From positions 124,001 to 188,000 of IMG/VR virus record IMGVR_UViG_3300042511_000879: 64,000 nucleotides of DNA; one strand, given 5' to 3'. Of the stretch, positions 5,479-24,018 are shown one piece after another. The notes below the pieces were generated by a model that was given only the letters and a program-made list of their open reading frames with translations, made no database searches and was not told the DNA's origin. Within the stretch, counting starts at the first letter, position 1, and every line of letters starts with the position of its first letter. A program made the position numbers and the translations under genes.

Positions 5479-7239
5479 TTAATTAACGTGTGAATATTTG
5501 TAAATGTCTCCATTATAAACGCAGAAGTATACGTCGTATCCGGTTACAGTTGATACAATACAAGTATCTGTCCAATTTCTAGGTGTTAGTCCTAGGGCAG
5601 TAAATTGAGGGCCTTGACCACCACTACCAAAATCTCCAGGTCGGTATTGCCTAATGTCTCCAGTAGTTGTGGAACTTGATTCTCCAGTCCACATGTCGGT
5701 ATTTGGTGCTATACTAAATCTTTTTGAATATGAAAATATGCTCGCATATTCAAACGTTGATGAAGCTGCTGGTTTTACGTACATTCCGGAACTTCCTGCA
5801 CTAACATATATGTCTCCATTAGCTGCAGTGGCCATACCTTCCCAGTTTCTAATAGTCTGTCCTGTTGTTGTAAATGTTGTTGCTCCAGATGGTTGTTTAT
5901 AAATATCTCCACCATATACACTAGCATAAATATCCCCATTTGGTGTTGCTGTTATACCATTCCAGTTTCTAATAGTCTGTCCTGTTGCAGTAAATGTTGT
6001 TGCTCCACTTGCTTGCTTAAGTATATCTCCAGTATATAGTGCATAATACATGTCTCCATTGGGAGCACCTGCGAAACAACCTGCTCCGGGTATAGTCTGT
6101 CCTGTTGCTATAAATGTGCCACTAGCTGCGGATTTTTTATAGATAGCTCCAGTACTAATGGAAGCATATATATCTCCATTAGCCGCGTCTCCAATAGACG
6201 TCCATGTTCTAGAAGTTTGACCTAACGGAGAAAGACTTGGAGTACTCCAACTATTTCCTTGTGATATATAAAATGTAGCCGAAGCTGCGGATTCGTTACC
6301 TGATAAATCAACAGCAGTAACCCACCAAGTAATTGGGGCGCCACCACCAAAACCTCCAAAGAATGTATTGCTAATGCGCATTGCACTTTTTCCAACAAGA
6401 TAAGATCCTATGGTATCATAACGCGTCGGAAGAGAAATATTTCTTGGTCTAGTATATTTTCCTAAAGTAGAAAATAGTATAGGGAATATTTTAGGTACAA
6501 TATGAATTGTCTGTACTGTAAAACTTCCAGATTCCCTAACATATAGGTTATAGTGATGCAACATATCATTGTCAGTTGAAGGATCCCATGTAAAATCAAT
6601 ATACCTCGTAGTACCTCCAATTATAGACTTTGCTCCCGTAAAGTTAGGAGGTGTTGATGGAGCCACATTAGGACTTTCATAAACTGAAGTATAAATTCCT
6701 TGAATTATGCTAGATTCGTCTATATAATATATAAGGGGATTTGTCCCTCCTTGTCGTTGATACCATCCTTGAGAATATGTTTCTTCTACTCCAAACCCAG
6801 AAGCACCTCCAGTATTACTACCATATACTATTGAACCTACTACCGGTGGGTTATCTGTTACCCAAAATGATACAAAAAGCGAATCATTTTGAACTAATGG
6901 ACCGCCGTAATCGGTATGTTTATAAGAAACGTATTTGGCCACGATTGTATCTGCAACCGTAGAATATATCCATGAATTTGTTGGGTCTATATTTATTCCG
7001 TAATATACCAATGGAACTCCACTTGCCCAAGCACTTTTAGGAACTAATTGTAAACTCCCATACGTACTTAAATTACTTGCATTAAGGCTATATTTTGCCT
7101 GCATAGCAGTTTTATCCATACATTGATTAGCCGCAGGAAGTGTTGTAAAATGAGACTGACCCGACAGCAGAGGAATTCCACTCGTCGAGGCATCTAGATA
7201 ACTAACCATTTGATTACTTGCAACATCATTCCATGCCAT
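5479..7239 (-). CDS. Virion protein with FN3-like domain and C-terminal beta-propeller
   Basis: FN3-like P.TP.NF...FTWDPS.D...YNLY...VTAVDLSGNES; about 40-aa repeats TFTATGQTIRNW.G.A..PNGDIY. Confidence 0.65.
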   Translation of the reverse strand: MAWNDVASNQMVSYLDASTSGIPLLSGQSHFTTLPAANQCMDKTAMQAKYSLNASNLSTYGSLQLVPKSAWASGVPLVYYGINIDPTNSWIYSTVADTIVAKYVSYKHTDYGGPLVQNDSLFVSFWVTDNPPVVGSIVYGSNTGGASGFGVEETYSQGWYQRQGGTNPLIYYIDESSIIQGIYTSVYESPNVAPSTPPNFTGAKSIIGGTTRYIDFTWDPSTDNDMLHHYNLYVRESGSFTVQTIHIVPKIFPILFSTLGKYTRPRNISLPTRYDTIGSYLVGKSAMRISNTFFGGFGGGAPITWWVTAVDLSGNESAASATFYISQGNSWSTPSLSPLGQTSRTWTSIGDAANGDIYASISTGAIYKKSAASGTFIATGQTIPGAGCFAGAPNGDMYYALYTGDILKQASGATTFTATGQTIRNWNGITATPNGDIYASVYGGDIYKQPSGATTFTTTGQTIRNWEGMATAANGDIYVSAGSSGMYVKPAASSTFEYASIFSYSKRFSIAPNTDMWTGESSSTTTGDIRQYRPGDFGSGGQGPQFTALGLTPRNWTDTCIVSTVTGYDVYFCVYNGDIYKYSHVN

Positions 7240-9941
7240 TATTTCTCTAATTGTTTTATTCTGTTCTCCAATTCTTGTATCTTTGCAACCAGGACTTCAA
7301 TGTAATTTATTGTAAGCATTCCATCATCACCTTTATTAACCTGGTCAGGATATGTTTCTTGAACTTCTTGTGCAACATATCCTATATGTATCTTAGTATC
7401 TCGTCCATCCTTCCAGGTAAATTTAATAGTATCTCCATCTCTTTCAATAATATCTTTTAACCTAGCATCAGATGTATTAAAGAATCCAGGAGATGTAACA
7501 TTTGTTGAAAAGTACCCTGCTCCAGTTACATTTAGTTTGTATCCATTTGGGTTTGTATTTCCTATACCTACACCTGTCCCATTATCGTAAATTTGACTAT
7601 TTGCTAAACTATATCCATCTGTGTATTTTGATAAATAATTAGCTGTTCCTACTCCTGTAAATGCTACATCTTTAAATGAAGAATATGCTGTTGCAGATCC
7701 CCATGTCTGTTGCCAGATACGCATTCCTATTGCATCTTTTCTGAACATTACTAGGTTATCATTTCCTCCTGAAGAGTCTTGATATGATCTCAGATGTATG
7801 AAATCTGCATAAGGTCCAGTATTATTGTTTGCCCAAGAAGTGAATCCAAACTTAAGTCTGTTTGCTGTTGATTCACTTGGTGAAATTGTCCTATTATCCT
7901 CTCCAGTTAGTAGTCCCGAAGTTGTAGCCGTAGCAGAGTTTCCTGTAATATTAATACCCCAATCTCCTGATGCAACGCTTTTTATAGAAATCATCGCATT
8001 TGTAGGAGATACTGAACGATAATAATTATCTCCTTGTTTAGTAATAAATGAACTAATTGATGTTCCACTTCCTGGATTGCCATCATCAGACATATTTATA
8101 TAGTTACCATTAATATATCCATTACCATCTCTTACAACAATATAATTTCCTAATGTTGATGTAGATGCATGGTAATTATCAACAGTATCTGCATTAGTTG
8201 CATTAGTTGCTGTACCTGTTAAGGCTCCTATAAAGGTTGTTGCGGAAATATCTCCAATAATTTCTGTACTTCTCTTCGCAGGTAAGGGATTTGCTGCCCA
8301 TGCAATTGATGTAAAACTTGGTACAACTGTTGAATACATATCAAATAAAACATATGGAGTACTTGAATTTGAAGCCCATATATATACTCCTACCCAACCT
8401 CCTACTACCTCTATATTACCTATTCTTAAGTAATCCGCAGCTGACGCTACTGCTGCGGATAGTCGCGTTTGTCCTGAATTTATTGAAGTTGCGCCGAGTG
8501 ATGTATAAATACCGAATTCTATTTCAAGAACTCCCATAATAGGTGCCCAGTTCCAATCACCTCCTACTCGGATTCTACCTCCTGCAAAAGCGGCGCCAGC
8601 CGAAGTATTGTATAATCTTACAAACCATCTACCACTTCCGGCATCGTTTCCAATTCCAGGGTAAGGAAGTACTATTCTTCTAAAATAATGGCCTGTATCT
8701 AATTTAATACTTCCATGTAATACAGTTTCAACGGTACTTGAAGTACCTAAAACAATTTGATTATTTTTAGTTGTAATTGCCTGGTATCCTATAGCTACAC
8801 TATTAGTAACATTAGCTAACTGCCCAACAATACCTCCTGCCTCTGAACCAATAAAAGTGTTTTGAGACCCACTTATAATAAGCGAGCCTGATAAATTTCC
8901 AATGGCAGTATTGTTATTTCCTGTAACAATCTTTAAAGATTGATGCCCAATAGCTGTAGTGAAACTACTTCCAGTTGGTGTTTGAGATACTGCTTGATAT
9001 CCGAGTACTGTATTTTGATTTCCCGTGTTATCGAGTAATGTATTTAAACCAATTCCTATATTAGTAGCGGCATTATTACCACCTCTCCATATAGTAATTG
9101 TATTTACTATAATATTATCCGTAAAGTTTTTTAGTCCTGAAAATTGTTGGTTATTTATTGTAATTACTCCTCCAAAAGCGGTTGTAGCTGGTTGCAAGGT
9201 TAAAGTACCACTTATTAATGTAGCACCAGTTGCATTAGATGCCGTTGCTACCGAAGGAATAGGAGCTAGAGTTGATACACTTGGCGCACCTTGTTCTCCC
9301 ATAGGTCCAAAAACACAATTCTTTAGTCCATTTATCGATGATACATTAGCAAAACTAGAATCAAGATACAATGGAGCTCCAATTGCTCTTGGTACAATTC
9401 TTATAGTTACACCATCTTTCAAATATCTTATATTATAACCATCGTATGTAATTGATACTATAGTATCTGTTGTAAATGTAGAAGATGGATTAATGAATAC
9501 ATTACTTTCATAGATATACAAAATGTTTTCATTTATAAACCATGCATAATCAATAGATGTGTATGAAGAATTAAGTGTTGGATCACTATTTAATCCAACC
9601 ATTAAAGCAAGTCCTATAGTAGTTGTTAATTGAGTTGACATATAACATCCTCTAGCATATCCTTCCGCAGAATATACTTGTCCATCCCATTGACCGGCAT
9701 TACCTGCTGCTTTATAAAAAGCATTTGAATTTTCACCGTAAGTAACACCACCGCTAAATAATGGCGTCCAATTTGAAGTACCTCTAAACCCTTGGAAACC
9801 TTGTACTCCTTGGAAACCTTGGAAACCTCGTACTCCTTGGAAACCTTGGAAACCTCGTACTCCTTGATATCCTTGATATCCTTGATATCCTTGATATCCT
9901 TGAAAACCTTGTGTTAATCCGACGTATGGGTAATGTGCCAT
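7239..9941 (-). CDS. Tail fibre/spike with short collagen segment, YadA-like head repeats and C-terminal peptidase S74 intramolecular chaperone
   Basis: GxQ repeats at the N-terminus; NT.LGYQA/TAIG..S repeats; SDARLKDI...GYVAQEV...YPD.V...INY followed by a coiled coil. Confidence 0.8.
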   Translation of the reverse strand: MAHYPYVGLTQGFQGYQGYQGYQGYQGVRGFQGFQGVRGFQGFQGVQGFQGFRGTSNWTPLFSGGVTYGENSNAFYKAAGNAGQWDGQVYSAEGYARGCYMSTQLTTTIGLALMVGLNSDPTLNSSYTSIDYAWFINENILYIYESNVFINPSSTFTTDTIVSITYDGYNIRYLKDGVTIRIVPRAIGAPLYLDSSFANVSSINGLKNCVFGPMGEQGAPSVSTLAPIPSVATASNATGATLISGTLTLQPATTAFGGVITINNQQFSGLKNFTDNIIVNTITIWRGGNNAATNIGIGLNTLLDNTGNQNTVLGYQAVSQTPTGSSFTTAIGHQSLKIVTGNNNTAIGNLSGSLIISGSQNTFIGSEAGGIVGQLANVTNSVAIGYQAITTKNNQIVLGTSSTVETVLHGSIKLDTGHYFRRIVLPYPGIGNDAGSGRWFVRLYNTSAGAAFAGGRIRVGGDWNWAPIMGVLEIEFGIYTSLGATSINSGQTRLSAAVASAADYLRIGNIEVVGGWVGVYIWASNSSTPYVLFDMYSTVVPSFTSIAWAANPLPAKRSTEIIGDISATTFIGALTGTATNATNADTVDNYHASTSTLGNYIVVRDGNGYINGNYINMSDDGNPGSGTSISSFITKQGDNYYRSVSPTNAMISIKSVASGDWGINITGNSATATTSGLLTGEDNRTISPSESTANRLKFGFTSWANNNTGPYADFIHLRSYQDSSGGNDNLVMFRKDAIGMRIWQQTWGSATAYSSFKDVAFTGVGTANYLSKYTDGYSLANSQIYDNGTGVGIGNTNPNGYKLNVTGAGYFSTNVTSPGFFNTSDARLKDIIERDGDTIKFTWKDGRDTKIHIGYVAQEVQETYPDQVNKGDDGMLTINYIEVLVAKIQELENRIKQLEK

Positions 9942-9969
9942 TGTTTATTTTTATTATTTTTAAAAAGAC

Positions 9970-10073
9970 CGGAGGATAGGGAGGGATACGAACATCATTT
10001 TTCCCGAAGGAACAGTTACGAACAACTATGTTCCCAAAGGAACAAGAACGGACTTCTACCTCCCTATCCTCCG
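9970..10073 (-). ncRNA. Candidate structured RNA/DNA element: perfect 15-bp outer inverted repeat enclosing two tandem hairpin repeats
   Basis: CGGAGGATAGGGAGG (9970-9984) pairs with CCTCCCTATCCTCCG (10059-10073). Inside on the minus strand are TGTTCC-TTTG-GGAACA and TTCC-TTCG-GGAA hairpins, each followed by TGTTCGTA. GC-rich for an intergenic space. Confidence 0.5.
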
Positions 10074-10080
10074 ACTTATA

Positions 10081-13000
10081 TTATGGTAAGTGAGTTTCAA
10101 ACATACATTTTAATACAGTTGGCACATGTAGCGGATTAATAAATGCACATGGATTACCATATAATGCACTTGCGGCATAATCTAACATGAAAGGCGCTTT
10201 ATGATGTATAATTTTAATAACTCTACTTAATGGTCCGGAAACAATTTCACCATAATGTAAACCCGTGACAGGATTAATTGGACCTGCATTTCCATCCCAA
10301 GCAACATATCTAAATGCAACATACATAGGAATATAAACTGGAGAATATGCAAATCTAGATGTAGGCAGATTCTTCTGGGAACGCTTATTTGCCGATGGTA
10401 CATAAGTATAATAGTCAGCGTCCTGTCCTGATTGATCACGATACTTTACTAAAAACTCTTGCCATCTTCCTGAAATCATCGGAGCTAAATTTATATATTG
10501 GTTATGACCTGTTACTTCAAAATGATTAGGTCTATCAACTCCTATAAACCCGGTTGTGATATTATTCTGATGATTTCCAGATCGGTTCCAATAGTTATTT
10601 CCCCATGCAGGATATGGAAAACTTCCATTAGGGTACCATGGCGCCGGTACTATATAACCTCCACCTGGACGATAATTTGGTTTCTTATTTTTCTTTCTAT
10701 AAAGAACCATTTCTATATATATATTATCATATACATTAAATACTTCCGATGACAAATCTTGTGTAATTGCGTATGGTGCAGAATCTAATGTTAATACGCT
10801 TCCGGCGGAATTAGTTACCATATTAATGGAATTAATTACTATAGGATCACCTAACTTAATTGATGGCACTGGCAAATTTCCTTTACCAATTGTCCCTTTT
10901 TCTCCCATCGGTCCAAAAACCAAATTTATTAACTTTTTGGTTGATGATACGTAATAAAGACTAGAATCAAGATACAATGGAGCTCCAATTACTCTTGATA
11001 CAGTTCTTTGTACTACTCCATCTTTCCAATATCTTATATTATAACCATCATATGTTATACTTAATACGGTATTTGCGAAAGTTCCTCCATAAGTTATTGC
11101 ATCTCCATTAATATCAACAGTGACACTTCCATTTTCAATTATATAAAGATCACCTGCTGCGCAGTACCAACAATAATCGATACTAGTATAACTACTATTG
11201 GCTGTTGGATCGCTATTTAATCCAACCATAAGTTGTTCACCAGTATTACTTAATTGAGTTGATACATAAGCTCCTCTAGTATATCCTTCTAAAGAATATA
11301 CTTGTCCATCCCATTGAGCATCATTACCTGTTGCTTTATAGAAAGTATTTGAATTTTCTGCATAAGTTACTCCGCCATTGAATAATGGTGTCCAATTTGA
11401 TGAACCTCTAAAACCTTGGAAACCTTGGGCTCCTTGTATTCCCTGAGCACCTTGGAAACCTTGAGCACCTTGTATTCCTTGAGCACCTTGGAAACCTTGA
11501 GCACCTTGGAAACCTTGGGCTCCTCCGAGTGCAATACTACTCCTAAAACCAACAGTCCCATCACTTTCTTTTACAAGAATATCGGTTGTTGTTCCGGCTG
11601 GAACAGTTGTAATTTTAAGTTTTGCTCCTGTTGTAATGTTTTTGTCACCATCCCAAGTAAACGGTTTTTCAATTTCGCTACCTAGTCCTTGATCACCCCA
11701 TCTTGCACTTAAAAGTTTAATTGACGAAATCCGAATTGGAGCCGGAGTTGTAGCTGTAAGTGTTAAACGAGAATATGCATCTCCGCCATACCAATTAACA
11801 TAAAACCACGCAGCGATTGCATTATGATTATTTGTCGAAGTATGTCTTACTATCCAATTTATATTATCTGCAGAAGTTTCATATACAACATTTTTTATTG
11901 GTGCTGTAGCTGTATAAGTTGAACCAATAACTAACCATTCTCCTATTGACCACTCCATTCCTGTCCAATTCCATCTTACAGAAGTTACTGTAACTCCATC
12001 AGCAACTTCGATTGTTTGATTTTCTTTTTGCGCAAATACTTCTTTATTAAGCGTTGCTGCATTATATGTTACATTATTAGATGAAGTTGAAAATGTTGGT
12101 GAAAACCTAGAAAATGCAAATAAGTCATGCCATAAATAAGGTGATATTGGTGTTTGAGCTACTTGTGTCGTATCACTTGTTATTACCTTATTTGTTAATG
12201 TTCCGTTTTGTTTAAAATTATCAATTCCAAGTGCTATAATAGAACCAGCTCCATTAACTAGGTCAGTTCCATTAAATGTTAAATTAGCTTCAGCATTAGC
12301 AGTATTTGTACCACCATCTGAAGTTAAAACTCTATTATCTGATGGGTTTGTTATTGTTGTAAATCCAGGTCCTTGGAAACCTTGAGCGCCTTGGAAACCT
12401 TGGGCTCCTTGGAAACCTTGAGCACCTTGGAAACCTTGGGCTCCTTGTCTACCTTGAGCTCCTTGGAAACCTTGGGCACCTTGGAAACCTTGAGCACCTT
12501 GTATTCCTTGGGCTCCTTGGAAACCTTGAAAACCCTGGGCTCCTTGTATTCCTTGGGCTCCTTGGAAACCTTGGGCTCCTTGTCTACCTTGAGCTCCTTG
12601 GAAACCTTGGGCACCTTGGAAACCTTGGGCTCCTTGTATTCCTTGGGCACCTTGGAAACCTTGGGCACCTTGGAAACCTTGAGCACCTTGTATTCCTTGG
12701 GCACCTTGGAAACCTTGGGCTCCTTGTATTCCTTGGGCTCCTTGTATTCCCTGAGCACCTTGAAATCCTTGGGCACCTTGAAAACCTTGGGCTCCTTGTA
12801 TTCCCTGAGCACCTTGAAAACCTTGAACACCTTGGAAACCTTGGGCTCCTTGTATTCCTTGAGCACCTTGAAAACCTTGGAAACCTTGGGCTCCTTGTAT
12901 TCCCTGAGCACCTTGTATTCCCTGAGCACCTTGAAAACCTTGGGCACCTTGTATTCCTTGAGCACCTTGGAAACCTTGAGCTCCTTGGAAACCTTGAGCA

Positions 13001-16000
13001 CCTTGGAAACCTTGGGCTCCTTGTATTCCTTGGGCTCCTTGTATTCCTTGGGCACCTTGGAAACCTTGTATTCCCTGAGCACCTTGGAAACCTTGGGCTC
13101 CTTGTCTACCTTGGGCACCTTGAAAACCTTGGGCTCCTTGTATTCCTTGGGCTCCTTGGAAACCTTGGGCTCCTTGTATTCCTTGAGCACCTTGAAAACC
13201 TTGGAAACCTTGGGCTCCTTGTGGTCCTTGTTCTCCCATTGGTCCAAAAACAACATTCTTTAAACCATTAGGTGTACCATTAGTATATGATATTGTACGG
13301 AAGAAAGTAGAATCAAAATATAGAGCGTTACCTATTGCCCTTGCAACAGTTCGTTGTAGAATACCATCTTTCCAATATCTTACATTATAACCATCATATG
13401 TTATTTGTAAAATAGTATCTGATGTATATGCACCTAAAGCAACTATTACACCTCCACTTTCATAGATTTCTACACTATTGTATTCAGTGACATACCATGC
13501 ATAATTAATACCTGGAAAACTAGGCGATGCAGAAGGATTATCACTTAAACCAAATAGTATATAATTAAGATTTGATTGTGGTTGAGCCGATACATAACAT
13601 CCTCTAGTATAACCCTCTAATGAATATACTTCAGCATCAAAAATATCATCGTTACCTATTGCTTTATGAAATATATTTGAATTTGCACCATATACTGTGC
13701 CACCATTAAAAACAGGTGTCCAATTTGCTACTCCTCTAATTCCTTGGAAGCCTTGAGCACCTTGGAAACCTTGGGCTCCTTGTATTCCCTGAGCACCTTG
13801 AAAACCTTGGGCTCCTTGTATTCCCTGAGCACCTTGAAAACCTTGGGCTCCTTGTATTCCCTGAGCACCTTGAAAACCTTGGGCTCCTTGTATTCCTTGA
13901 GCTCCTTGAAAACCTTGAGCACCTTGAAAACCTTGGGCACCTTGGAAACCTTGAGCACCTTGTATTCCTTGAGCACCTTGAAAACCTTGTGCTCCTTGTC
14001 TACCTTGTGCTCCTTGTATTCCTTGAGCACCTTGAAAACCTTGAGCACCTTGAAAACCTTGTGCTCCTTGTATTCCTTGAGCACCTTGAAAACCTTGGGC
14101 TCCTTGTATTCCCTGAGCACCTTGGAAGCCTTGAGCACCTTGAAAACCTTGAAAACCTTGGGCACCTTGTATTCCTTGGGCACCTTGAAAACCTTGGGCT
14201 CCTTGTATTCCCTGGGCACCTTGAAAACCTTGGGCTCCTTGTATTCCTTGAGCACCTTGGAAGCCTTGAGCTCCTTGTATTCCTTGAGCACCTTGAAAAC
14301 CTTGGGCTCCTTGTATTCCTTGAGCACCTTGGAAGCCTTGAGCACCTTGAAAACCTTGAAAACCTTGGGCACCTTGTCTACCTTGGGCTCCTTGGAAACC
14401 TTGGGCTCCTTGTATTCCCTGAGCACCTTGAAAACCTTGGGCTCCTTGTATTCCTTGGGCACCTTGGATTCCTTGGGCACCTTGTATTCCTTGAGCACCT
14501 TGTATTCCTTGAGCACCTTGAGCACCTTGGAAACCTTGAGCACCTTGTATTCCTTGGGCACCTTGAGCACCTTGGAAACCTTGAGCACCTTGGAAACCTT
14601 GAGCACCTTGGAAACCTTGTACTCCTTGAGCACCTTGGAAACCTTGGGCACCTTGGAAACCTTGGATTCCTTGGGCACCTTGGATTCCTTGGGCACCTTG
14701 TATTCCTTGAGCACCTTGTATTCCTTGAGCACCTTGTATTCCTTGAGCACCTTGGAAACCTTGGGCACCTTGGAAACCTTGAGCACCTTGGAAACCTTGG
14801 GCACCTTGGATTCCTTGGGCACCTTGTATTCCCTGGGCACCTTGTATTCCCTGGGCACCTTGGAAACCTTGGGCACCTTGGATTCCTTGGGCACCTTGGA
14901 AACCTTGAGCACCTTGTATTCCTTGAGCACCTTGTATTCCTTGAGCACCTTGGATTCCTTGAGCACCTTGTATTCCCTGGGCACCTTGTATTCCTTGGGC
15001 ACCTTGGAAACCTTGAGCACCTTGTATTCCCTGGGCACCTTGTATTCCTTGAGCTCCTTGGATTCCTTGAGCACCTTGGATTCCTTGAGCACCTTGGATT
15101 CCTTGAGCACCTTGGATTCCTTGAGCACCTTGGATTCCCTGAGCACCTTGTATTCCTTGGGCACCTTGTATTCCTTGAGCACCTTGAAAACCTTGTGCTC
15201 CTTGTATTCCTTGAGCACCTTGAAAACCTTGAGCACCTTGAAAACCTTGTGCACCTTGAAAACCTTGAACACCTTGGAAACCTTGGGCTCCTTGTATTCC
15301 TTGAGCACCTTGAAAACCTTGGGCTCCTTGTATTCCTTGAGCACCTTGTATTCCTTGAGCACCTTGGAAACCTTGTACTCCTTGAGTTCCTTCAATACCT
15401 AATGATGTTACAACATAAGAATAGTATTGACTACCTTCTGTATAAAAAGTAACAGGATGATTACCTGAAGATTGATCGACTACATAGACATTAACAATCA
15501 TTCTATCCGTAGGATCAATTTGATATGATGCAGGTATTACTAAATCTACGTAATTTTCAACTGGTATAGTGGATTCAATCCAACCTATAAGTACTTGATT
15601 TGTTGATATTGGCGCTGCTGCGTATGGTGTACCGGTACTATCTGCTAGTTGTATAGTACAGAATGTATCTGTATTAAAACCAGTTGCTCCTTTTAAGAAA
15701 TGTAAATGAAATTTTTGAGGTCCTGGTGGAATAACATTAACTCCTAATCCACTTGCATCAGTAATATATGTTTGAACTAATACTGGAGTTGTTCCAGTAG
15801 TTGTTACTGTAATAGTTTGAACCGATCCAGTGGTTGGTAATGTACCTATTTGTTTATATTCTAAAGGTGTCTGTGTTACTGATTGATTAAAATAGTATAT
15901 CTGTCCGGATGAAACGCCTAATGGACCTTGGTCACCTTGAAAACCTTGAGCTCCTTGTATTCCCTGAGCACCTTGGAAACCTTGGGCACCTTGAAAACCT

Positions 16001-17172
16001 TGGGCACCTTGAAAACCTTGAAATCCTTGGGCTCCTTGTATTCCTTGGGCACCTTGAAAACCTTGGGCACCTTGAAAACCTTGAAATCCTTGGGCACCTT
16101 GAAAACCTTGGGCACCTTGAAAACCTTGAAATCCTTGGGCTCCTTGTATTCCCTGAGCACCTTGGAAACCTTGGGCACCTTGAAAACCTTGGGCACCTTG
16201 AAAACCTTGGGCACCTTGAAAACCTTGAAAACCTTGGGCACCTTGAAAACCTTGAAAACCTTGGGCTCCTTGTATTCCCTGAGCACCTTGGAAACCTTGG
16301 GCTCCTTGTATTCCCTGAGCTCCTTGTATTCCCTGAGCACCTTGTAATCCTTGGGCTCCTTGAAAACCTTGGGCTCCTTGAAAACCTTGTATTCCCTGAG
16401 CACCTTGAAAACCTTGGGCACCTTGTATTCCCTGGGCGCCTTGAAATCCTTGAGCACCTTGTATTCCTTGAGCACCTTGTATTCCCTGAGCACCTTGAAA
16501 ACCTTGGGCACCTTGGAAACCTTGGGCTCCTTGAAAACCTTGAGCACCTTGAAAACCTTGTATTCCTTGGGCTCCTTGTATTCCCTGAGCACCTTGAAAT
16601 CCTTGGGCTCCTTGTATTCCCTGGGCGCCTTGAAATCCTTGAGCACCTTGAAATCCTTGGGCTCCTTGTATTCCCTGAGCACCTTGAAAACCTTGGGCAC
16701 CTTGGAAACCTTGGGCTCCTTGTATTCCCTGGGCACCTTGTATTCCTTGGGCTCCTTGTATTCCCTGAGCACCTTGAAAACCTTGGGCACCTTGGAAACC
16801 TTGGGCTCCTTGTATTCCCTGGGCGCCTTGGAAACCTTGAGCACCTTGAAATCCTTGGGCTCCTTGTATTCCTTGGGCACCTTGAAAACCTTGGGCACCT
16901 TGAAAACCTTGGGCGCCTTGGAAACCTTGAGCACCTTGTCTACCTTGGGCACCTTGTATTCCTTGAGCACCTTGAAATCCTTGAGCACCAGTTCCTTGGA
17001 AGCCTTGAGCACCTTGGAAACCCTGAGGACCATTAGCTGGCCCTTGAGGACCTTGAGGTCCTGTGTCAACAGTTCCACCTAGATTTTTTAGTGAACCATA
17101 TTTGTCATGGACGAATACCGGACCTAGGTCTGTGCTGGAATTTCCATATTTATCTAGTCTTTGTATGTTCAT
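10081..17172 (-). CDS. Giant collagen-like (Gly-X-Gln) fibre protein, 2363 aa
   Basis: Four GAQ/GFQ/GIQ triplet blocks separated by globular domains. Confidence 0.85.
11404..11522 (-). repeat. Collagen block 4 (about 40 aa)
   Basis: Gly-X-Gln periodicity; boundaries approximate. Confidence 0.85.
12368..13235 (-). repeat. Collagen block 3 (about 290 aa)
   Basis: Gly-X-Gln periodicity; boundaries approximate. Confidence 0.9.
13738..15392 (-). repeat. Collagen block 2 (about 550 aa)
   Basis: Uninterrupted Gly-X-Gln periodicity; boundaries approximate. Confidence 0.9.
15921..17063 (-). repeat. Collagen block 1 (9-nt unit tandem repeat)
   Basis: GGTGCTCAA/GGTTTCCAA/GGAATACAA-type units; boundaries approximate. 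Confidence 0.9.
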
Positions 17173-17468: not shown

Positions 17469-17522
17469 AATTTTTTCTTTTTTATTATATATTCGTAAAT
17501 CAGGAGGGACTCCTTATAAGGG

Positions 17523-23082: not shown

Positions 23083-23475
23083 TTATACGAAATATTTTCT
23101 CATTAGAAATGTAACTATTGCTCCACTTGCTGTTAATAAGGCAATAAGTACTTTAACAACTCCATTTTTCCATCTGACAAGAGATTTATGTTCTTCAATT
23201 AATTTATCACGCTCAACCTTCCATTCCTCTTGTTCTTGTCTAAATTCTGAATTCTTTTTATTTTCTACAATCACACCATCAAAGGGATTCAGGAGTTGTT
23301 TTTTCAATCCTCTAATCTCTTCTTTCATTTCATTTTGATTCTCCATCAATTTTTCTAATGTGTTCTCTATTTGAATATAATTAGGGTCTTCAATTCGTCT
23401 TTTGAATGAAGAAAATAAATCATACAGTTCAAGAATCATTTCTTGTGGGCTTTGGTCTTGCTTCATATACAGCAT
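23083..23475 (-). CDS. Coiled-coil protein with C-terminal transmembrane helix (holin/XhlA-like candidate)
   Basis: Heptad-rich body followed by VVKVLIALLTASGAIVTFLMRK. Confidence 0.5.
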   Translation of the reverse strand: MLYMKQDQSPQEMILELYDLFSSFKRRIEDPNYIQIENTLEKLMENQNEMKEEIRGLKKQLLNPFDGVIVENKKNSEFRQEQEEWKVERDKLIEEHKSLVRWKNGVVKVLIALLTASGAIVTFLMRKYFV

Positions 23476-23522
23476 TGGGTCTTTTTAGTCTATAATATAT
23501 ATCAAACTAAAAAGACCCAATG
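23473..23522 (-). promoter_or_regulatory. 17-bp hairpin masking the start codon, with a late promoter motif in the loop
   Basis: CATTGGGTCTTTTTAGT (23473-23489) pairs with ACTAAAAAGACCCAATG (23506-23522); GATATATA at 23496-23503. Confidence 0.7.
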
Positions 23523-23547
23523 TGGGTTTTACTATGTATTTATAGGA

Positions 23548-24018
23548 TTATTTATATAACTTTGCAGTAAAGTTACGGGCTCCTCTTGGAAGATTCTCGC
23601 CGTGAGGTCCTTTTGCTTTATAATCTTGTAGTAATTTAATGGCCTCTTCAGGTGATGTTGCTTCAACTTCCCAATCCCATTCCATTCCATTCGTATCATC
23701 GAAAAATACTGTGTAAATACTTTTCTTTGCTTCATCTATTCCAGAGCCAATTTCAGGAGTTCCATAGTGTGCAATCCATTCTTCTCTAGTCATGTTAGCA
23801 GCTTGAGCCTGCATTCCTAAGAAATCATATTCATGCATAATTGTTTCAGATTCTGTAACTTTATCATAAAGTTCAGTATCTCCATTCCATTTCCAATCAG
23901 CAGCATCAAAATCTTTAAGTTTCTTAGCTTTTTGATATTCTGAAGACGATAAATGGTCAGCATTAAGATTTATAGCACCTTCGCCAATAAACTCTTCGAA
24001 TAATTTTACTTTTTTCAT
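23548..24018 (-). CDS. Capsid-targeting-peptide protein (array gene 7)
   Basis: MKKVKLFEEFIGE|G; internal VTE|S and IDE|A. Confidence 0.65.
   Translation of the reverse strand: MKKVKLFEEFIGEGAINLNADHLSSSEYQKAKKLKDFDAADWKWNGDTELYDKVTESETIMHEYDFLGMQAQAANMTREEWIAHYGTPEIGSGIDEAKKSIYTVFFDDTNGMEWDWEVEATSPEEAIKLLQDYKAKGPHGENLPRGARNFTAKLYK

What the first reader, a model, noticed from the sequence alone, without database searches (positions are those of the whole stretch)
9970..10073. GC-rich palindromic element with two internal tandem hairpin repeats between the two fibre genes
Seen: a perfect 15-bp terminal inverted repeat encloses two ~30-nt direct repeats (plus strand TACGAACA-N6-TTCCC(G/A)AAGGAACA). 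On the minus strand these form C(UUUG)G and C(UUCG)G tetraloop hairpins, each followed by UGUUCGUA, and a T-tract follows the outer stem. This is too elaborate for a simple terminator. Inference: a two-site protein-binding RNA regulating fibre stoichiometry, a miniature inverted-repeat mobile element, or a recombination site for fibre-gene exchange.
Basis: partly seen in the sequence, partly recalled or inferred. Interest (0 to 1): 0.6.

Follow-up and report, generated by a model that had tools for sequence, protein, structure and literature searches.

The report
Conserved three-way-junction RNA between phage fibre genes
The hairpin-rich element between the two tail-fibre genes of this lake-water jumbo phage belongs to an apparently undescribed family of structured RNAs that always follows one particular fibre-tip domain, so it is more than a plain terminator and is not a mobile element.

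Summary
A perfect 15-bp inverted repeat (9970-9984 / 10059-10073) encloses two 28-30-nt direct repeats. On the gene (minus) strand these form C(UUUG)G and C(UUCG)G hairpins, and a U5 tract follows the outer stem.

The element is single-copy in the 234-kb phage genome. It is the most stable of 78 intergenic folds, and the only one with a long interior.

Homologues of the last ~270 aa of the upstream fibre protein (28-96% identity, 35-64% GC phages) are each followed by a long-stemmed, multi-hairpin structure. In 15 cases it is the same RNA architecture:
- a long outer stem;
- two hairpins, mostly with UUCG/UACG loops;
- three single-stranded junction strands, each carrying GUYCRU.

Helices covary: 28 of 30 pairs show double changes, and 78-84% of cells pair against 55-57% in shuffles. 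RNAalifold finds the same three helices. Rfam has no match. There is one copy per genome, always 0-27 nt after the stop codon and usually 16-31 nt before the next ATG. The U-tract is present in only about half of the members.

The MITE and recombination-site readings are rejected. The most likely function is a cis-acting intercistronic RNA (3'-end protector or partial terminator plus a factor-binding platform). That function is inferred, not shown.

The parts
10084..10899 (-). Last 272 codons of the 2363-aa collagen-like fibre gene. This is a beta-sandwich C-terminal domain ending ..ETHLP*, and the RNA element always follows it.
   Evidence: Homologues at 28-96% identity are all followed by the element or a variant of it. 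The AF2 model is all-beta with no specific PDB match.
10081..10083 (-). Stop codon (UAA) of the upstream fibre gene, 3 nt before the extended outer stem.
10059..10077 (-). 5' strand of the outer stem P1. It has 15 perfect pairs (10073-10059) plus 4 extension pairs.
   Evidence: It covaries in relatives.
10045..10058 (-). Junction strand J1, carrying GUCCGU at 10053-10048.
10029..10044 (-). Hairpin P2: UGUUCC-UUUG-GGAACA.
   Evidence: It covaries in relatives.
10015..10028 (-). Junction strand J2, carrying GUUCGU at 10023-10018.
9999..10014 (-). Hairpin P3: UGUUCC-UUCG-GGAAAA, with one G.A mismatch. The natural variant L093/X14 has a perfect stem and a UUUG loop.
9985..9998 (-). Junction strand J3, carrying GUUCGU at 9993-9988.
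9965..9984 (-). 3' strand of the outer stem P1. It is perfect over 9984-9970, then has a G.U pair, a bulge and 3 pairs that reach into the U-tract.
9962..9966 (-). U5 tract after the stem. It is U4 in the natural variant. In relatives it is weak in some and absent in L100, L103, L108 and L109.
9939..9961 (-). A-rich, Shine-Dalgarno-less leader and the ATG (9941-9939) of the 900-aa fibre gene. Neither of the phage's two recurrent promoter-like motifs is present here.

Best explanation
SHOWN. The element is the window's copy of a conserved, single-copy, structured RNA on the gene (minus) strand. It is a three-way junction. A long outer stem P1 closes two short hairpins, P2 and P3, which mostly carry UNCG-type tetraloops. 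The three single-stranded junction strands each carry the same hexamer, GUYCRU. It sits in the intercistronic gap directly after the stop codon of a particular fibre C-terminal domain and about 20-30 nt before the next start codon. It keeps this place in phages from 35% to 64% GC.

INFERRED (mechanism). The two fibre genes are probably co-transcribed, because no promoter-like motif lies between the element and the ATG. The very stable junction would then act in cis on the polycistronic late mRNA. It would serve as a barrier to 3'-to-5' decay and, where a U-tract follows as in this window, as a leaky terminator. The message for the upstream giant fibre and that for the downstream fibre and accessory genes would so end up at different levels. 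The three exposed GUYCRU strands are too conserved for a mere spacer and most likely bind a protein or another multimeric factor that modulates this.

Family:
- Homologues of the upstream domain were found by protein search and fetched with flanks. Each has a 104-123-nt stem-loop in the same place.
- A sequence-only MAFFT alignment of 13 members supports all three helices. 78.5% of cells pair against 56.7% in shuffles (0/500). 28 of 30 pairs show changes on both sides. Slid controls give 40-53%.
- RNAalifold finds the same helices independently.
- A model-based alignment of 15 members gives 84.2% paired, with 27 of 28 pairs changed on both sides.

Junction motif:
- Over 39 instances the hexamer reads G37 U38 Y37 C37 R35 U31 of 39.

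RNA and strand:
- 15 of 26 hairpin loops are UUCG or UACG.
- G.U cells number 31 against 16 A.C cells.

Copy number and context:
- There is one hit in the window's own genome and one each in four other phage records, including a complete 83-kb genome.
- There is no hit in 53 other fibre loci that lack the domain.
- An independent DNA-pattern scan recovered one further member (L196, 64% GC), again behind a distant homologue of the same domain.

Natural variant:
- L093 / runs X12 and X14 keep both arms unchanged. The G.A mismatch in P3 is repaired, while 9 of 74 interior positions change.

Co-transcription:
- The phage's promoter-like motifs are absent from 9942-9969.

Not a standard terminator:
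- The phage's other terminators are simple hairpins with 3-8-nt loops and U6-U8 tails.
- The U-tract is missing in several family members.
Against: - No RNA data exist. None of the 20 runs that hold the stretch is on record as RNA, so transcription through the element, 3' ends and processing are all unobserved.
- In this window the stem is followed by U5, so simple termination cannot be excluded for this member.
- No binding partner is identified, and the GUYCRU strands could instead form tertiary contacts within the junction.
- Covariation cannot by itself distinguish RNA from single-stranded or cruciform DNA. The strand and RNA arguments (UNCG loops, a 2:1 excess of G.U over A.C) are moderate, not decisive.
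- Four distant homologues (L110, L113, L114, L115) have a long stem with a different interior that the model does not match.
- The late-promoter motif is my own inference from k-mer enrichment.
Confidence: 0.5

Rival explanations
1. Plain intrinsic terminator of the giant fibre gene. Its loop happens to have been expanded by a 30-nt tandem duplication, and the interior has no function of its own.
For: - A 15-19-bp GC-rich stem is followed by U5, directly after a stop codon, on the coding strand only.
- The interior is a 2.2-copy tandem repeat, and one lineage has homogenised the copies.
- This phage does use hairpin-plus-U-tract terminators.
Against: - The interior architecture and the GUYCRU motif are conserved, with covarying hairpins, in phages sharing only 28-45% protein identity.
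- The U-tract is absent or weak in about half of the members and only U4 in the natural variant.
- No promoter-like motif lies between the element and the next ATG 23-28 nt away. Efficient termination would therefore silence the 900-aa fibre gene and the genes after it.
Confidence: 0.12
2. A processing site or released small RNA. The 19-28-bp outer duplex is cut by RNase III or a similar enzyme. This separates the two cistrons and may free a stable ~100-nt junction RNA that acts in trans, for example as a decoy that sequesters a host RNA-binding protein or defence nuclease through its three GUYCRU strands.
For: - Long, nearly perfect outer duplexes of 15-28 bp occur in all members.
- The core is extremely stable, with UNCG loops.
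- The single-stranded motifs are conserved more strongly than the neighbouring protein.
- Intercistronic RNase III sites are well known in T7-like phages (my own knowledge).
Against: - There is no RNA evidence.
- A trans-acting RNA would not obviously need to stay behind one particular protein domain, yet the linkage is strict.
Confidence: 0.15
3. A 5'-leader element of the downstream gene. The junction sits at a fixed short distance before the next ATG and helps Shine-Dalgarno-less initiation, re-initiation after termination, or 5'-end protection of the downstream message.
For: - The distance from the stem base to the next ATG is 16-31 nt in 11 of the 12 members in which it could be measured.
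- Only 9 of 240 genes in this phage have a Shine-Dalgarno-like tetramer.
- The stop codon lies 0-27 nt before the stem, so a terminating ribosome would touch or open its base.
Against: - The downstream genes belong to at least four unrelated families: fibre-like M[AG]HYP proteins, a glycosyltransferase and others. The upstream domain is constant.
- In L109 the next ATG is 120 nt away.
Confidence: 0.1
4. A DNA-level element: a miniature mobile element, an invertible switch, an exchange site for fibre cassettes, or an operator array.
For: - It has perfect 15-bp terminal inverted repeats and a possible 3-bp GAC flank on each side.
- GAACA half-sites are spaced at multiples of 10 bp.
- The fibre genes around it are mosaic. 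The variant contig has a joint at 10876, and the genes flanking the domain and the element differ between the window and L093.
Against: - There is a single copy per genome, at one syntenic site.
- The inner unit has no copies in 185,579 species genomes.
- An arms-only metagenome scan gave 18 hits, none with this interior.
- The orientation is the same in all contigs and no strand-switch joints were seen.
- The two palindromes within one element differ in sequence and covary, and they favour RNA-specific UNCG loops. This does not fit one dimeric DNA-binding protein.
Confidence: 0.04

Closest known systems
Rho-independent (intrinsic) terminators
   Same: A GC-rich stem directly after a stop codon, followed in this window by a U-tract on the coding strand only.
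   Different: The 'loop' is a conserved 74-nt two-hairpin junction instead of 3-8 nt. The U-tract is not conserved across the family. The next gene starts 16-31 nt later without a recognisable promoter.
C(UUCG)G hairpins in T4 intercistronic regions (Tuerk et al. 1988, recalled from memory) and REP/BIME-type intercistronic stabilisers such as malE-malF in E. coli (recalled from memory)
   Same: Extra-stable UNCG hairpins placed between cistrons of a phage or operon mRNA. Their accepted role is protection of the upstream message and differential expression within an operon.
   Different: Those are single hairpins, or repeated elements dispersed in many copies. This one is a single-copy, composite three-way junction with three conserved single-stranded motifs, tied to one protein domain.
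T7-type intercistronic RNase III processing sites (recalled from memory)
   Same: A long duplex between late or structural cistrons of a phage polycistronic RNA.
   Different: T7 sites are single irregular hairpins with an internal loop. They have no enclosed hairpins or repeated motif. Cleavage was not tested here.
Type III antitoxin RNAs (ToxI and phage pseudo-ToxI; recalled from memory)
   Same: Short tandem RNA repeats (30 nt, 2.2 copies here), with copy homogenisation between phage lineages. ToxI forms a three-fold assembly with its partner protein.
   Different: There is no ToxN/AbiQ/CptN-like gene next to it. The repeats are locked inside a long outer stem. The position is fixed behind a fibre domain.
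Rfam release 15 families
   Same: None.
   Different: Nothing came near a gathering score in the window at E up to 10 (best mir-483, 24 bits against 60). There were no hits at gathering thresholds in 16 related loci.

Membership tests
Intrinsic terminator | GC-rich stem on the transcribed strand directly downstream of a gene | tested here: met
   The stem has 15 perfect pairs (67% GC), extended to 19, and starts 3 nt after the stop codon.
Intrinsic terminator | Short hairpin loop (about 3-8 nt) | tested here: not met
   The stem encloses a 74-nt interior with two further hairpins. The consensus scan did not call the outer stem and picked up only the inner hairpin at 10044-10029. The phage's other terminators have loops of 3-8 nt.
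Intrinsic terminator | U-tract immediately after the stem, conserved with the structure | tested here: inconclusive
   The window has U5 after a G.U pair and a bulge, and the natural variant has U4. The tract is present in L098, L099 and L102, weak in L095, and absent in L100, L103, L108 and L109.
Intrinsic terminator | Transcripts end there | not testable with these tools
   No RNA run holds the sequence.
Miniature inverted-repeat transposable element | Terminal inverted repeats | tested here: met
   The arms are 15 bp and perfect.
Miniature inverted-repeat transposable element | Multiple dispersed copies in a genome or in host genomes | tested here: not met
   There is one copy in the 234-kb genome by BLAST, by k-mer and by covariance model. 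There is one copy in each of four other phage records. The inner unit gave 0 hits in 185,579 species genomes.
Miniature inverted-repeat transposable element | Target-site duplication and presence/absence polymorphism | tested here: not met
   Only a 3-bp GAC appears on both flanks, which is within chance. The structure is present at the same site in every relative examined, down to 28% protein identity.
Invertible DNA switch (inverton) | Both orientations of the segment between the inverted repeats occur in a population | tested here: not met
   The orientation is the same in three IMG/VR contigs and in L093. Contigs of four runs show no strand-change joint at 9985 or 10058. Contigs can hide minority forms.
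Type III toxin-antitoxin antitoxin RNA | Tandem repeats directly upstream of a ToxN/AbiQ/CptN-type endoribonuclease gene | tested here: not met
   The downstream gene is a 900-aa fibre protein with collagen repeats and a Peptidase_S74 chaperone domain. In relatives the downstream genes are fibre-like proteins or a glycosyltransferase.
Diversity-generating retroelement target (variable region, homing signal, hairpin) | A template repeat elsewhere that matches the 3' end of the fibre gene | tested here: not met
   A sensitive blastn of 9700-10700 against the whole genome found only collagen-repeat matches. Nothing matched 10081-10700.
RNase III processing site | About two turns of nearly perfect double-stranded RNA | tested here: met
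   The window has 19 pairs, and relatives have up to about 28.
RNase III processing site | Cleavage within the duplex | not testable with these tools
   No RNA data are available.
Any Rfam 15 family | Score at or above the family's gathering threshold | tested here: not met
   

The most novel reading that the evidence does not exclude
The RNA is a three-fold pseudo-symmetric platform: three helices and three identical GUYCRU strands. It may be recognised by the homotrimeric fibre-tip domain encoded immediately upstream. The newly made trimer could then feed back on its own operon mRNA, or chains released at the stop codon could be gathered in cis for trimer nucleation. This would explain why the RNA stays linked to that one domain across very distant phages while the downstream genes change.
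Probability: 0.1. Interest if true: 0.85.

Novelty: new variant of a known kind. Interest (0 to 1): 0.62.

Why it matters
Structured RNAs of uncultivated phages are poorly charted. This one is conserved more deeply than the protein next to it, has an unusual three-fold repeated junction, and sits at the point where two tail-fibre genes must be expressed in a fixed ratio.

If it sets that ratio, or if it binds the fibre protein, it would be a new post-transcriptional device for virion assembly in hosts that do not use Shine-Dalgarno initiation. It would also be a compact, very stable RNA module of possible use in synthetic operons. At the least it is a candidate new RNA family with clear covariation, ready for curation and for simple bench tests.

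Tried and rejected
1. Copies in the phage's own genome. BLAST, k-mers, an inverted-repeat scan and the covariance model found none beyond the element itself.
2. IMG/VR scans with the arm and with the inner unit. Only three contigs of the same phage came back, all 100% identical, so they gave no covariation.
3. Protein-anchored search with the whole C-terminal part and with the 900-aa protein. It returned only the same three contigs or unrelated fibre mosaics.
4. Fibre loci sharing the NWTP..FGPMGE domain. None has the element.
5. Arms-only metagenome scan. It gave 18 hits, none with this interior. Six of them form an unrelated inverted-repeat family.
6. Species-genome scans. The inner unit gave 0 hits and the protein domain found no prophage relatives.
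7. GenBank phages. There was no DNA match and no protein match, so no cultured relative and no host are known.
8. Diversity-generating-retroelement reading. No template repeat exists.
9. Small hairpins within the junction strands that would present GUYCR in a loop. These are possible in L098, L102 and L111 but not consistent across the family.
10. Translational bypass from the last Pro codon to the Pro codon of MAHYP. The codons do not match in relatives (by eye).
11. Pairing of GUYCRU with hairpin loops or with 16S rRNA. It is not consistent across members (by eye).
12. Fold of the upstream domain. Foldseek found nothing, and VIA-align gave only generic beta-sandwich matches at Z about 5.
13. 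A 30-nt, five-copy tandem array with GGAAGUUCAUCC in hairpin loops (L141, L151, L159, L192). It scores 31-32 bits with the model but has no outer stem and no domain nearby, so I treat it as unrelated.
14. Literature searches found no description of such a motif.
15. Complex prediction was not used, because it cannot take RNA.

Full report
WHAT IS THERE

The window is part of a 234-kb IMG/VR virus record. It is about 35% GC. 235 of 240 long ORFs lie on the minus strand, and almost none has a Shine-Dalgarno site. Runs that hold the stretch are lake-water and freshwater metagenomes, plus one industrial-waste study.

The finding lies in a 139-nt gap on the minus strand. Upstream is the stop codon (10081-10083) of a 2363-aa fibre protein built of collagen-like blocks. 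Downstream is the ATG (9941) of a 900-aa fibre protein with a short collagen stretch and a Peptidase_S74 chaperone end.

- The 15-bp arms are perfect and unique in the window.
- The two 28-nt direct repeats match the stated pattern, with no matches expected by chance.
- On the minus strand they give UGUUCC-UUUG-GGAACA and UGUUCC-UUCG-GGAAAA hairpins, each followed by UGUUCGUA.
- The outer stem extends to 19 pairs and runs into U5.
- The fold is -51.7 kcal/mol, z = -6.3.

IS IT SPECIAL IN THIS GENOME?

Yes. It is the only GC-rich perfect inverted repeat with a long spacer in 234 kb. It is the most stable of 78 minus-strand intergenic regions. The phage's other strong intergenic hairpins are textbook terminators with an A-tract, a 10-17-bp stem, a 3-8-nt loop and U6-U8. 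There is no second copy by BLAST, by k-mer or, later, by covariance model. Rfam gives nothing.

FIRST ROUND OF RELATIVES: NOTHING USEFUL

IMG/VR holds three more contigs of the same phage, identical over 240 nt. Fibre loci sharing other domains of these proteins have no such element.

An arms-only scan of metagenomes gave 18 hits, none with this interior. The inner unit is absent from 185,579 species genomes. No template repeat of a diversity-generating retroelement exists.

A NATURAL VARIANT

Contigs of runs X12 and X14 carry a variant. The JGI contig L093 holds the same sequence.
- Both arms are unchanged.
- Nine interior positions differ (9995, 9997, 9998, 10000, 10006, 10015-10017, 10027).
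- The U-tract is one base shorter.

The changes make the two 30-nt units almost identical. They repair the G.A mismatch of the second hairpin and turn its loop from UUCG to UUUG. The fold energy is unchanged at -52.7 kcal/mol. The two-unit design is therefore kept while the units are homogenised.

The genes flanking the domain and the element differ. The domain is called as a separate 246-aa gene in L093, and the next gene is 593 aa instead of 900 aa with the same N-terminus. The variant contig also has a joint at 10876. The fibre genes are therefore mosaic around a constant core of C-terminal domain plus element.

THE DECISIVE STEP

I searched with the last 272 residues of the giant fibre protein alone (window 10084-10899). 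This gave eight proteins at 32-96% identity. An alignment of them gave nine more IMG/VR loci at 28-39%.

In every locus fetched, the homologous gene is followed by an intergenic stem-loop of 98-123 nt. In 13 of them, and in L094 once the covariance model was used, the anatomy is the same as in the window:
- a long outer stem whose sequence differs from phage to phage;
- two short hairpins whose stems differ between phages and between the two hairpins of one element;
- three single-stranded linkers of about 10-14 nt that all carry the same hexamer.

A DNA-pattern scan that used no protein information recovered one more member, L196 (59 bits, 64% GC). The ORF upstream of it proved to be a distant homologue of the same domain.

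Four of the most distant homologues (L110, L113, L114, L115) have a long stem with a different multi-hairpin interior.

STATISTICS

A MAFFT alignment of 13 trimmed members, made without any structural information, supports the three helices:
- 78.5% of cells pair, against 56.7 +/- 1.9% in shuffles (0 of 500 reach it).
- 28 of 30 pairs show changes on both sides.
- Sliding the 3' partner by 1-3 columns drops pairing to 40-53%.

RNAalifold predicts the same three helices on its own. Aligned to the model, 15 members give 84.2% paired and 27 of 28 pairs with double changes. That alignment leans towards the model, as the tool warns.

Across 39 junction strands the hexamer reads G 37, U 38, Y 37, C 37, R 35, U 31, that is GUYCRU. 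In the window these are GUCCGU (10053-10048), GUUCGU (10023-10018) and GUUCGU (9993-9988).

RNA OR DNA, AND WHICH STRAND?

- 15 of 26 hairpin loops are UUCG or UACG and four more are UUUG. UNCG loops stabilise RNA hairpins specifically (established knowledge). On the other strand they would read CGAA or CGUA.
- G.U cells outnumber A.C cells 31 to 16. A structure read from the gene strand predicts this.
- The two palindromes of one element differ in sequence. This argues against a single dimeric DNA-binding protein.

These arguments favour an RNA on the gene strand. They are moderate in strength.

CONTEXT RULES

- There is one copy per genome, including a complete 83-kb genome with terminal repeats.
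- The stop codon lies 0-27 nt before the stem base and overlaps it in L095. The next ATG is 16-31 nt after the stem in 11 of the 12 members in which it could be measured, and 120 nt after it in L109.
- The upstream domain is constant. The downstream genes are not. They include fibre-like proteins starting M[AG][HNS][YH]P, a glycosyltransferase in L098, L099 and L102, and others.
- The U-tract is present in the window, L093, L098, L099 and L102. It is weak in L095 and absent in L100, L103, L108 and L109.

IS THE DOWNSTREAM GENE CO-TRANSCRIBED?

Two motifs are strongly enriched before start codons in this phage:
- A long TTG(W)TTATATTTACAT motif has about 30 copies, 24-34 nt before ATGs. It often comes straight after a terminator, and none lies in the structural module.
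- A (G)ATATATAA(T) motif occurs in the structural region.

Neither occurs in the 23-28 nt between the element and ATG 9941. I infer that the 900-aa gene and the genes after it are transcribed through the element, from a promoter near 17500. This is an inference from motif enrichment, not a mapped start site. If it is right, an efficient terminator here would be self-defeating.

HOW IT MOST LIKELY WORKS

Shown:
- It is a conserved, single-copy, three-way-junction structure with three exposed GUYCRU strands.
- It is fixed between the stop codon of a fibre-tip domain and the next start codon.
- That it is an RNA read from the gene strand is supported by moderate evidence (see the section above).

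Inferred:
- It acts in cis on a polycistronic late mRNA as a very stable barrier to 3'-to-5' decay.
- Where a U-tract follows, it also acts as a leaky terminator.
- The upstream and downstream fibre messages so end up at different levels.
- The conserved single strands bind a factor that tunes this.

I put about 0.5 on this class of mechanism. The rivals are:
- a processing site or released small RNA (0.15);
- a plain terminator with an accidental interior (0.12);
- a leader element for the downstream gene (0.10);
- any DNA-level element (0.04).

The most novel reading not excluded is that the three-fold RNA is bound by the trimeric domain encoded just upstream (about 0.1). The domain has many invariant Arg, Tyr, Phe and Trp residues. 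These would suit sugar binding equally well. Its predicted fold is an uninformative beta-sandwich.

COMPARISON WITH KNOWN SYSTEMS

- It works most like intercistronic stabiliser and terminator hairpins, such as T4 C(UUCG)G hairpins and REP-type elements. I recall these from memory.
- It shares the long duplex of T7 RNase III sites.
- It fails the loop criterion of an intrinsic terminator and only inconsistently meets the U-tract criterion.
- It fails the copy-number and polymorphism criteria of a miniature mobile element.
- It has no toxin gene for a type III antitoxin.
- It shows no second orientation for an invertible switch.
- It matches no Rfam family, and three literature searches found no description.

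I therefore class it as a new variant of a known kind: a new structured-RNA family among phage intercistronic elements. Its function is still to be shown.

LIMITS

- No RNA reads exist for this phage.
- The single read-laying run used assembled contigs, which hide minority forms.
- Public collections were reached only through protein anchors and exact patterns, not by a full covariance-model search. The family's true size and its contexts are therefore lower bounds.

Noticed in passing
window 28006, 29475, 43380, 45962, 52761, 55374, 58679, 61147 (minus strand); about 30 copies genome-wide: A long, highly conserved promoter-like motif, TTG(W)TTATATTTACAT(W)..AATTAAAAC, lies 24-34 nt before start codons. 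It often comes immediately after a hairpin-plus-U-tract terminator. It is absent from the structural module (window 1-27000). It may be an early or middle promoter class of this jumbo phage.
   Followed up: partly
window 1340, 4650, 17495, 18830 (minus strand, upstream of genes in the structural region): A second enriched upstream motif, (G)ATATATAA(T), was seen 27 times against 2.8 expected for TATATAA. It resembles T4-type late promoters and is a candidate late promoter.
   Followed up: partly
whole genome (G000): Only 9 of 240 long ORFs have a Shine-Dalgarno-like tetramer upstream, and 235 of 240 ORFs are on one strand. This points to a Bacteroidota-like host that does not use Shine-Dalgarno initiation. 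No cultured relative or prophage relative was found.
   Followed up: partly
window 10081-17172 and 7239-9941: The 2363-aa fibre protein has five collagen-like G-X-Y blocks. It shares a ~160-aa NWTP..FGPMGE domain with the 900-aa protein: two copies in the large protein and one in the small one, 53-69% identical. Contigs from other lakes show length variation in the short collagen block at 9790-9912 and a different join at 10876. The fibres are therefore mosaic and repeat-variable in nature.
   Followed up: partly
L075, L078, L082, L084, L090, L092 (metagenome contigs): An unrelated family of ~100-nt inverted-repeat elements shares arms of the type GGGAGGATAGGGAGGAT and an interior rich in ATACGCGTACGCG. 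It turned up only because its arms coincide with the window's arm sequence.
   Followed up: no
L151:5550-5710, L141:6460-6620, L159, L192: A tandem array of at least five 30-nt units. Each unit is a hairpin that presents GGAAGUUCAUCC in its loop. It has the same hexamer and the same 30-nt period as the element, but no outer stem and no fibre domain nearby. Its relation to the family is unknown.
   Followed up: partly
window 23471-23557: A 20-bp nearly perfect hairpin (CAUUGGGUCUUUUUAGU...ACUAAAAAGACCCAAUG). Its 3' arm contains the ATG of the next gene, which suggests a structure that occludes that start codon.
   Followed up: no
L110, L113, L114, L115: The most distant homologues of the fibre C-terminal domain are also followed by long-stemmed multi-hairpin structures, but with other junction motifs (for example GAGCAUACA repeated in L115). 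These may be sister families that co-vary with the protein.
   Followed up: partly
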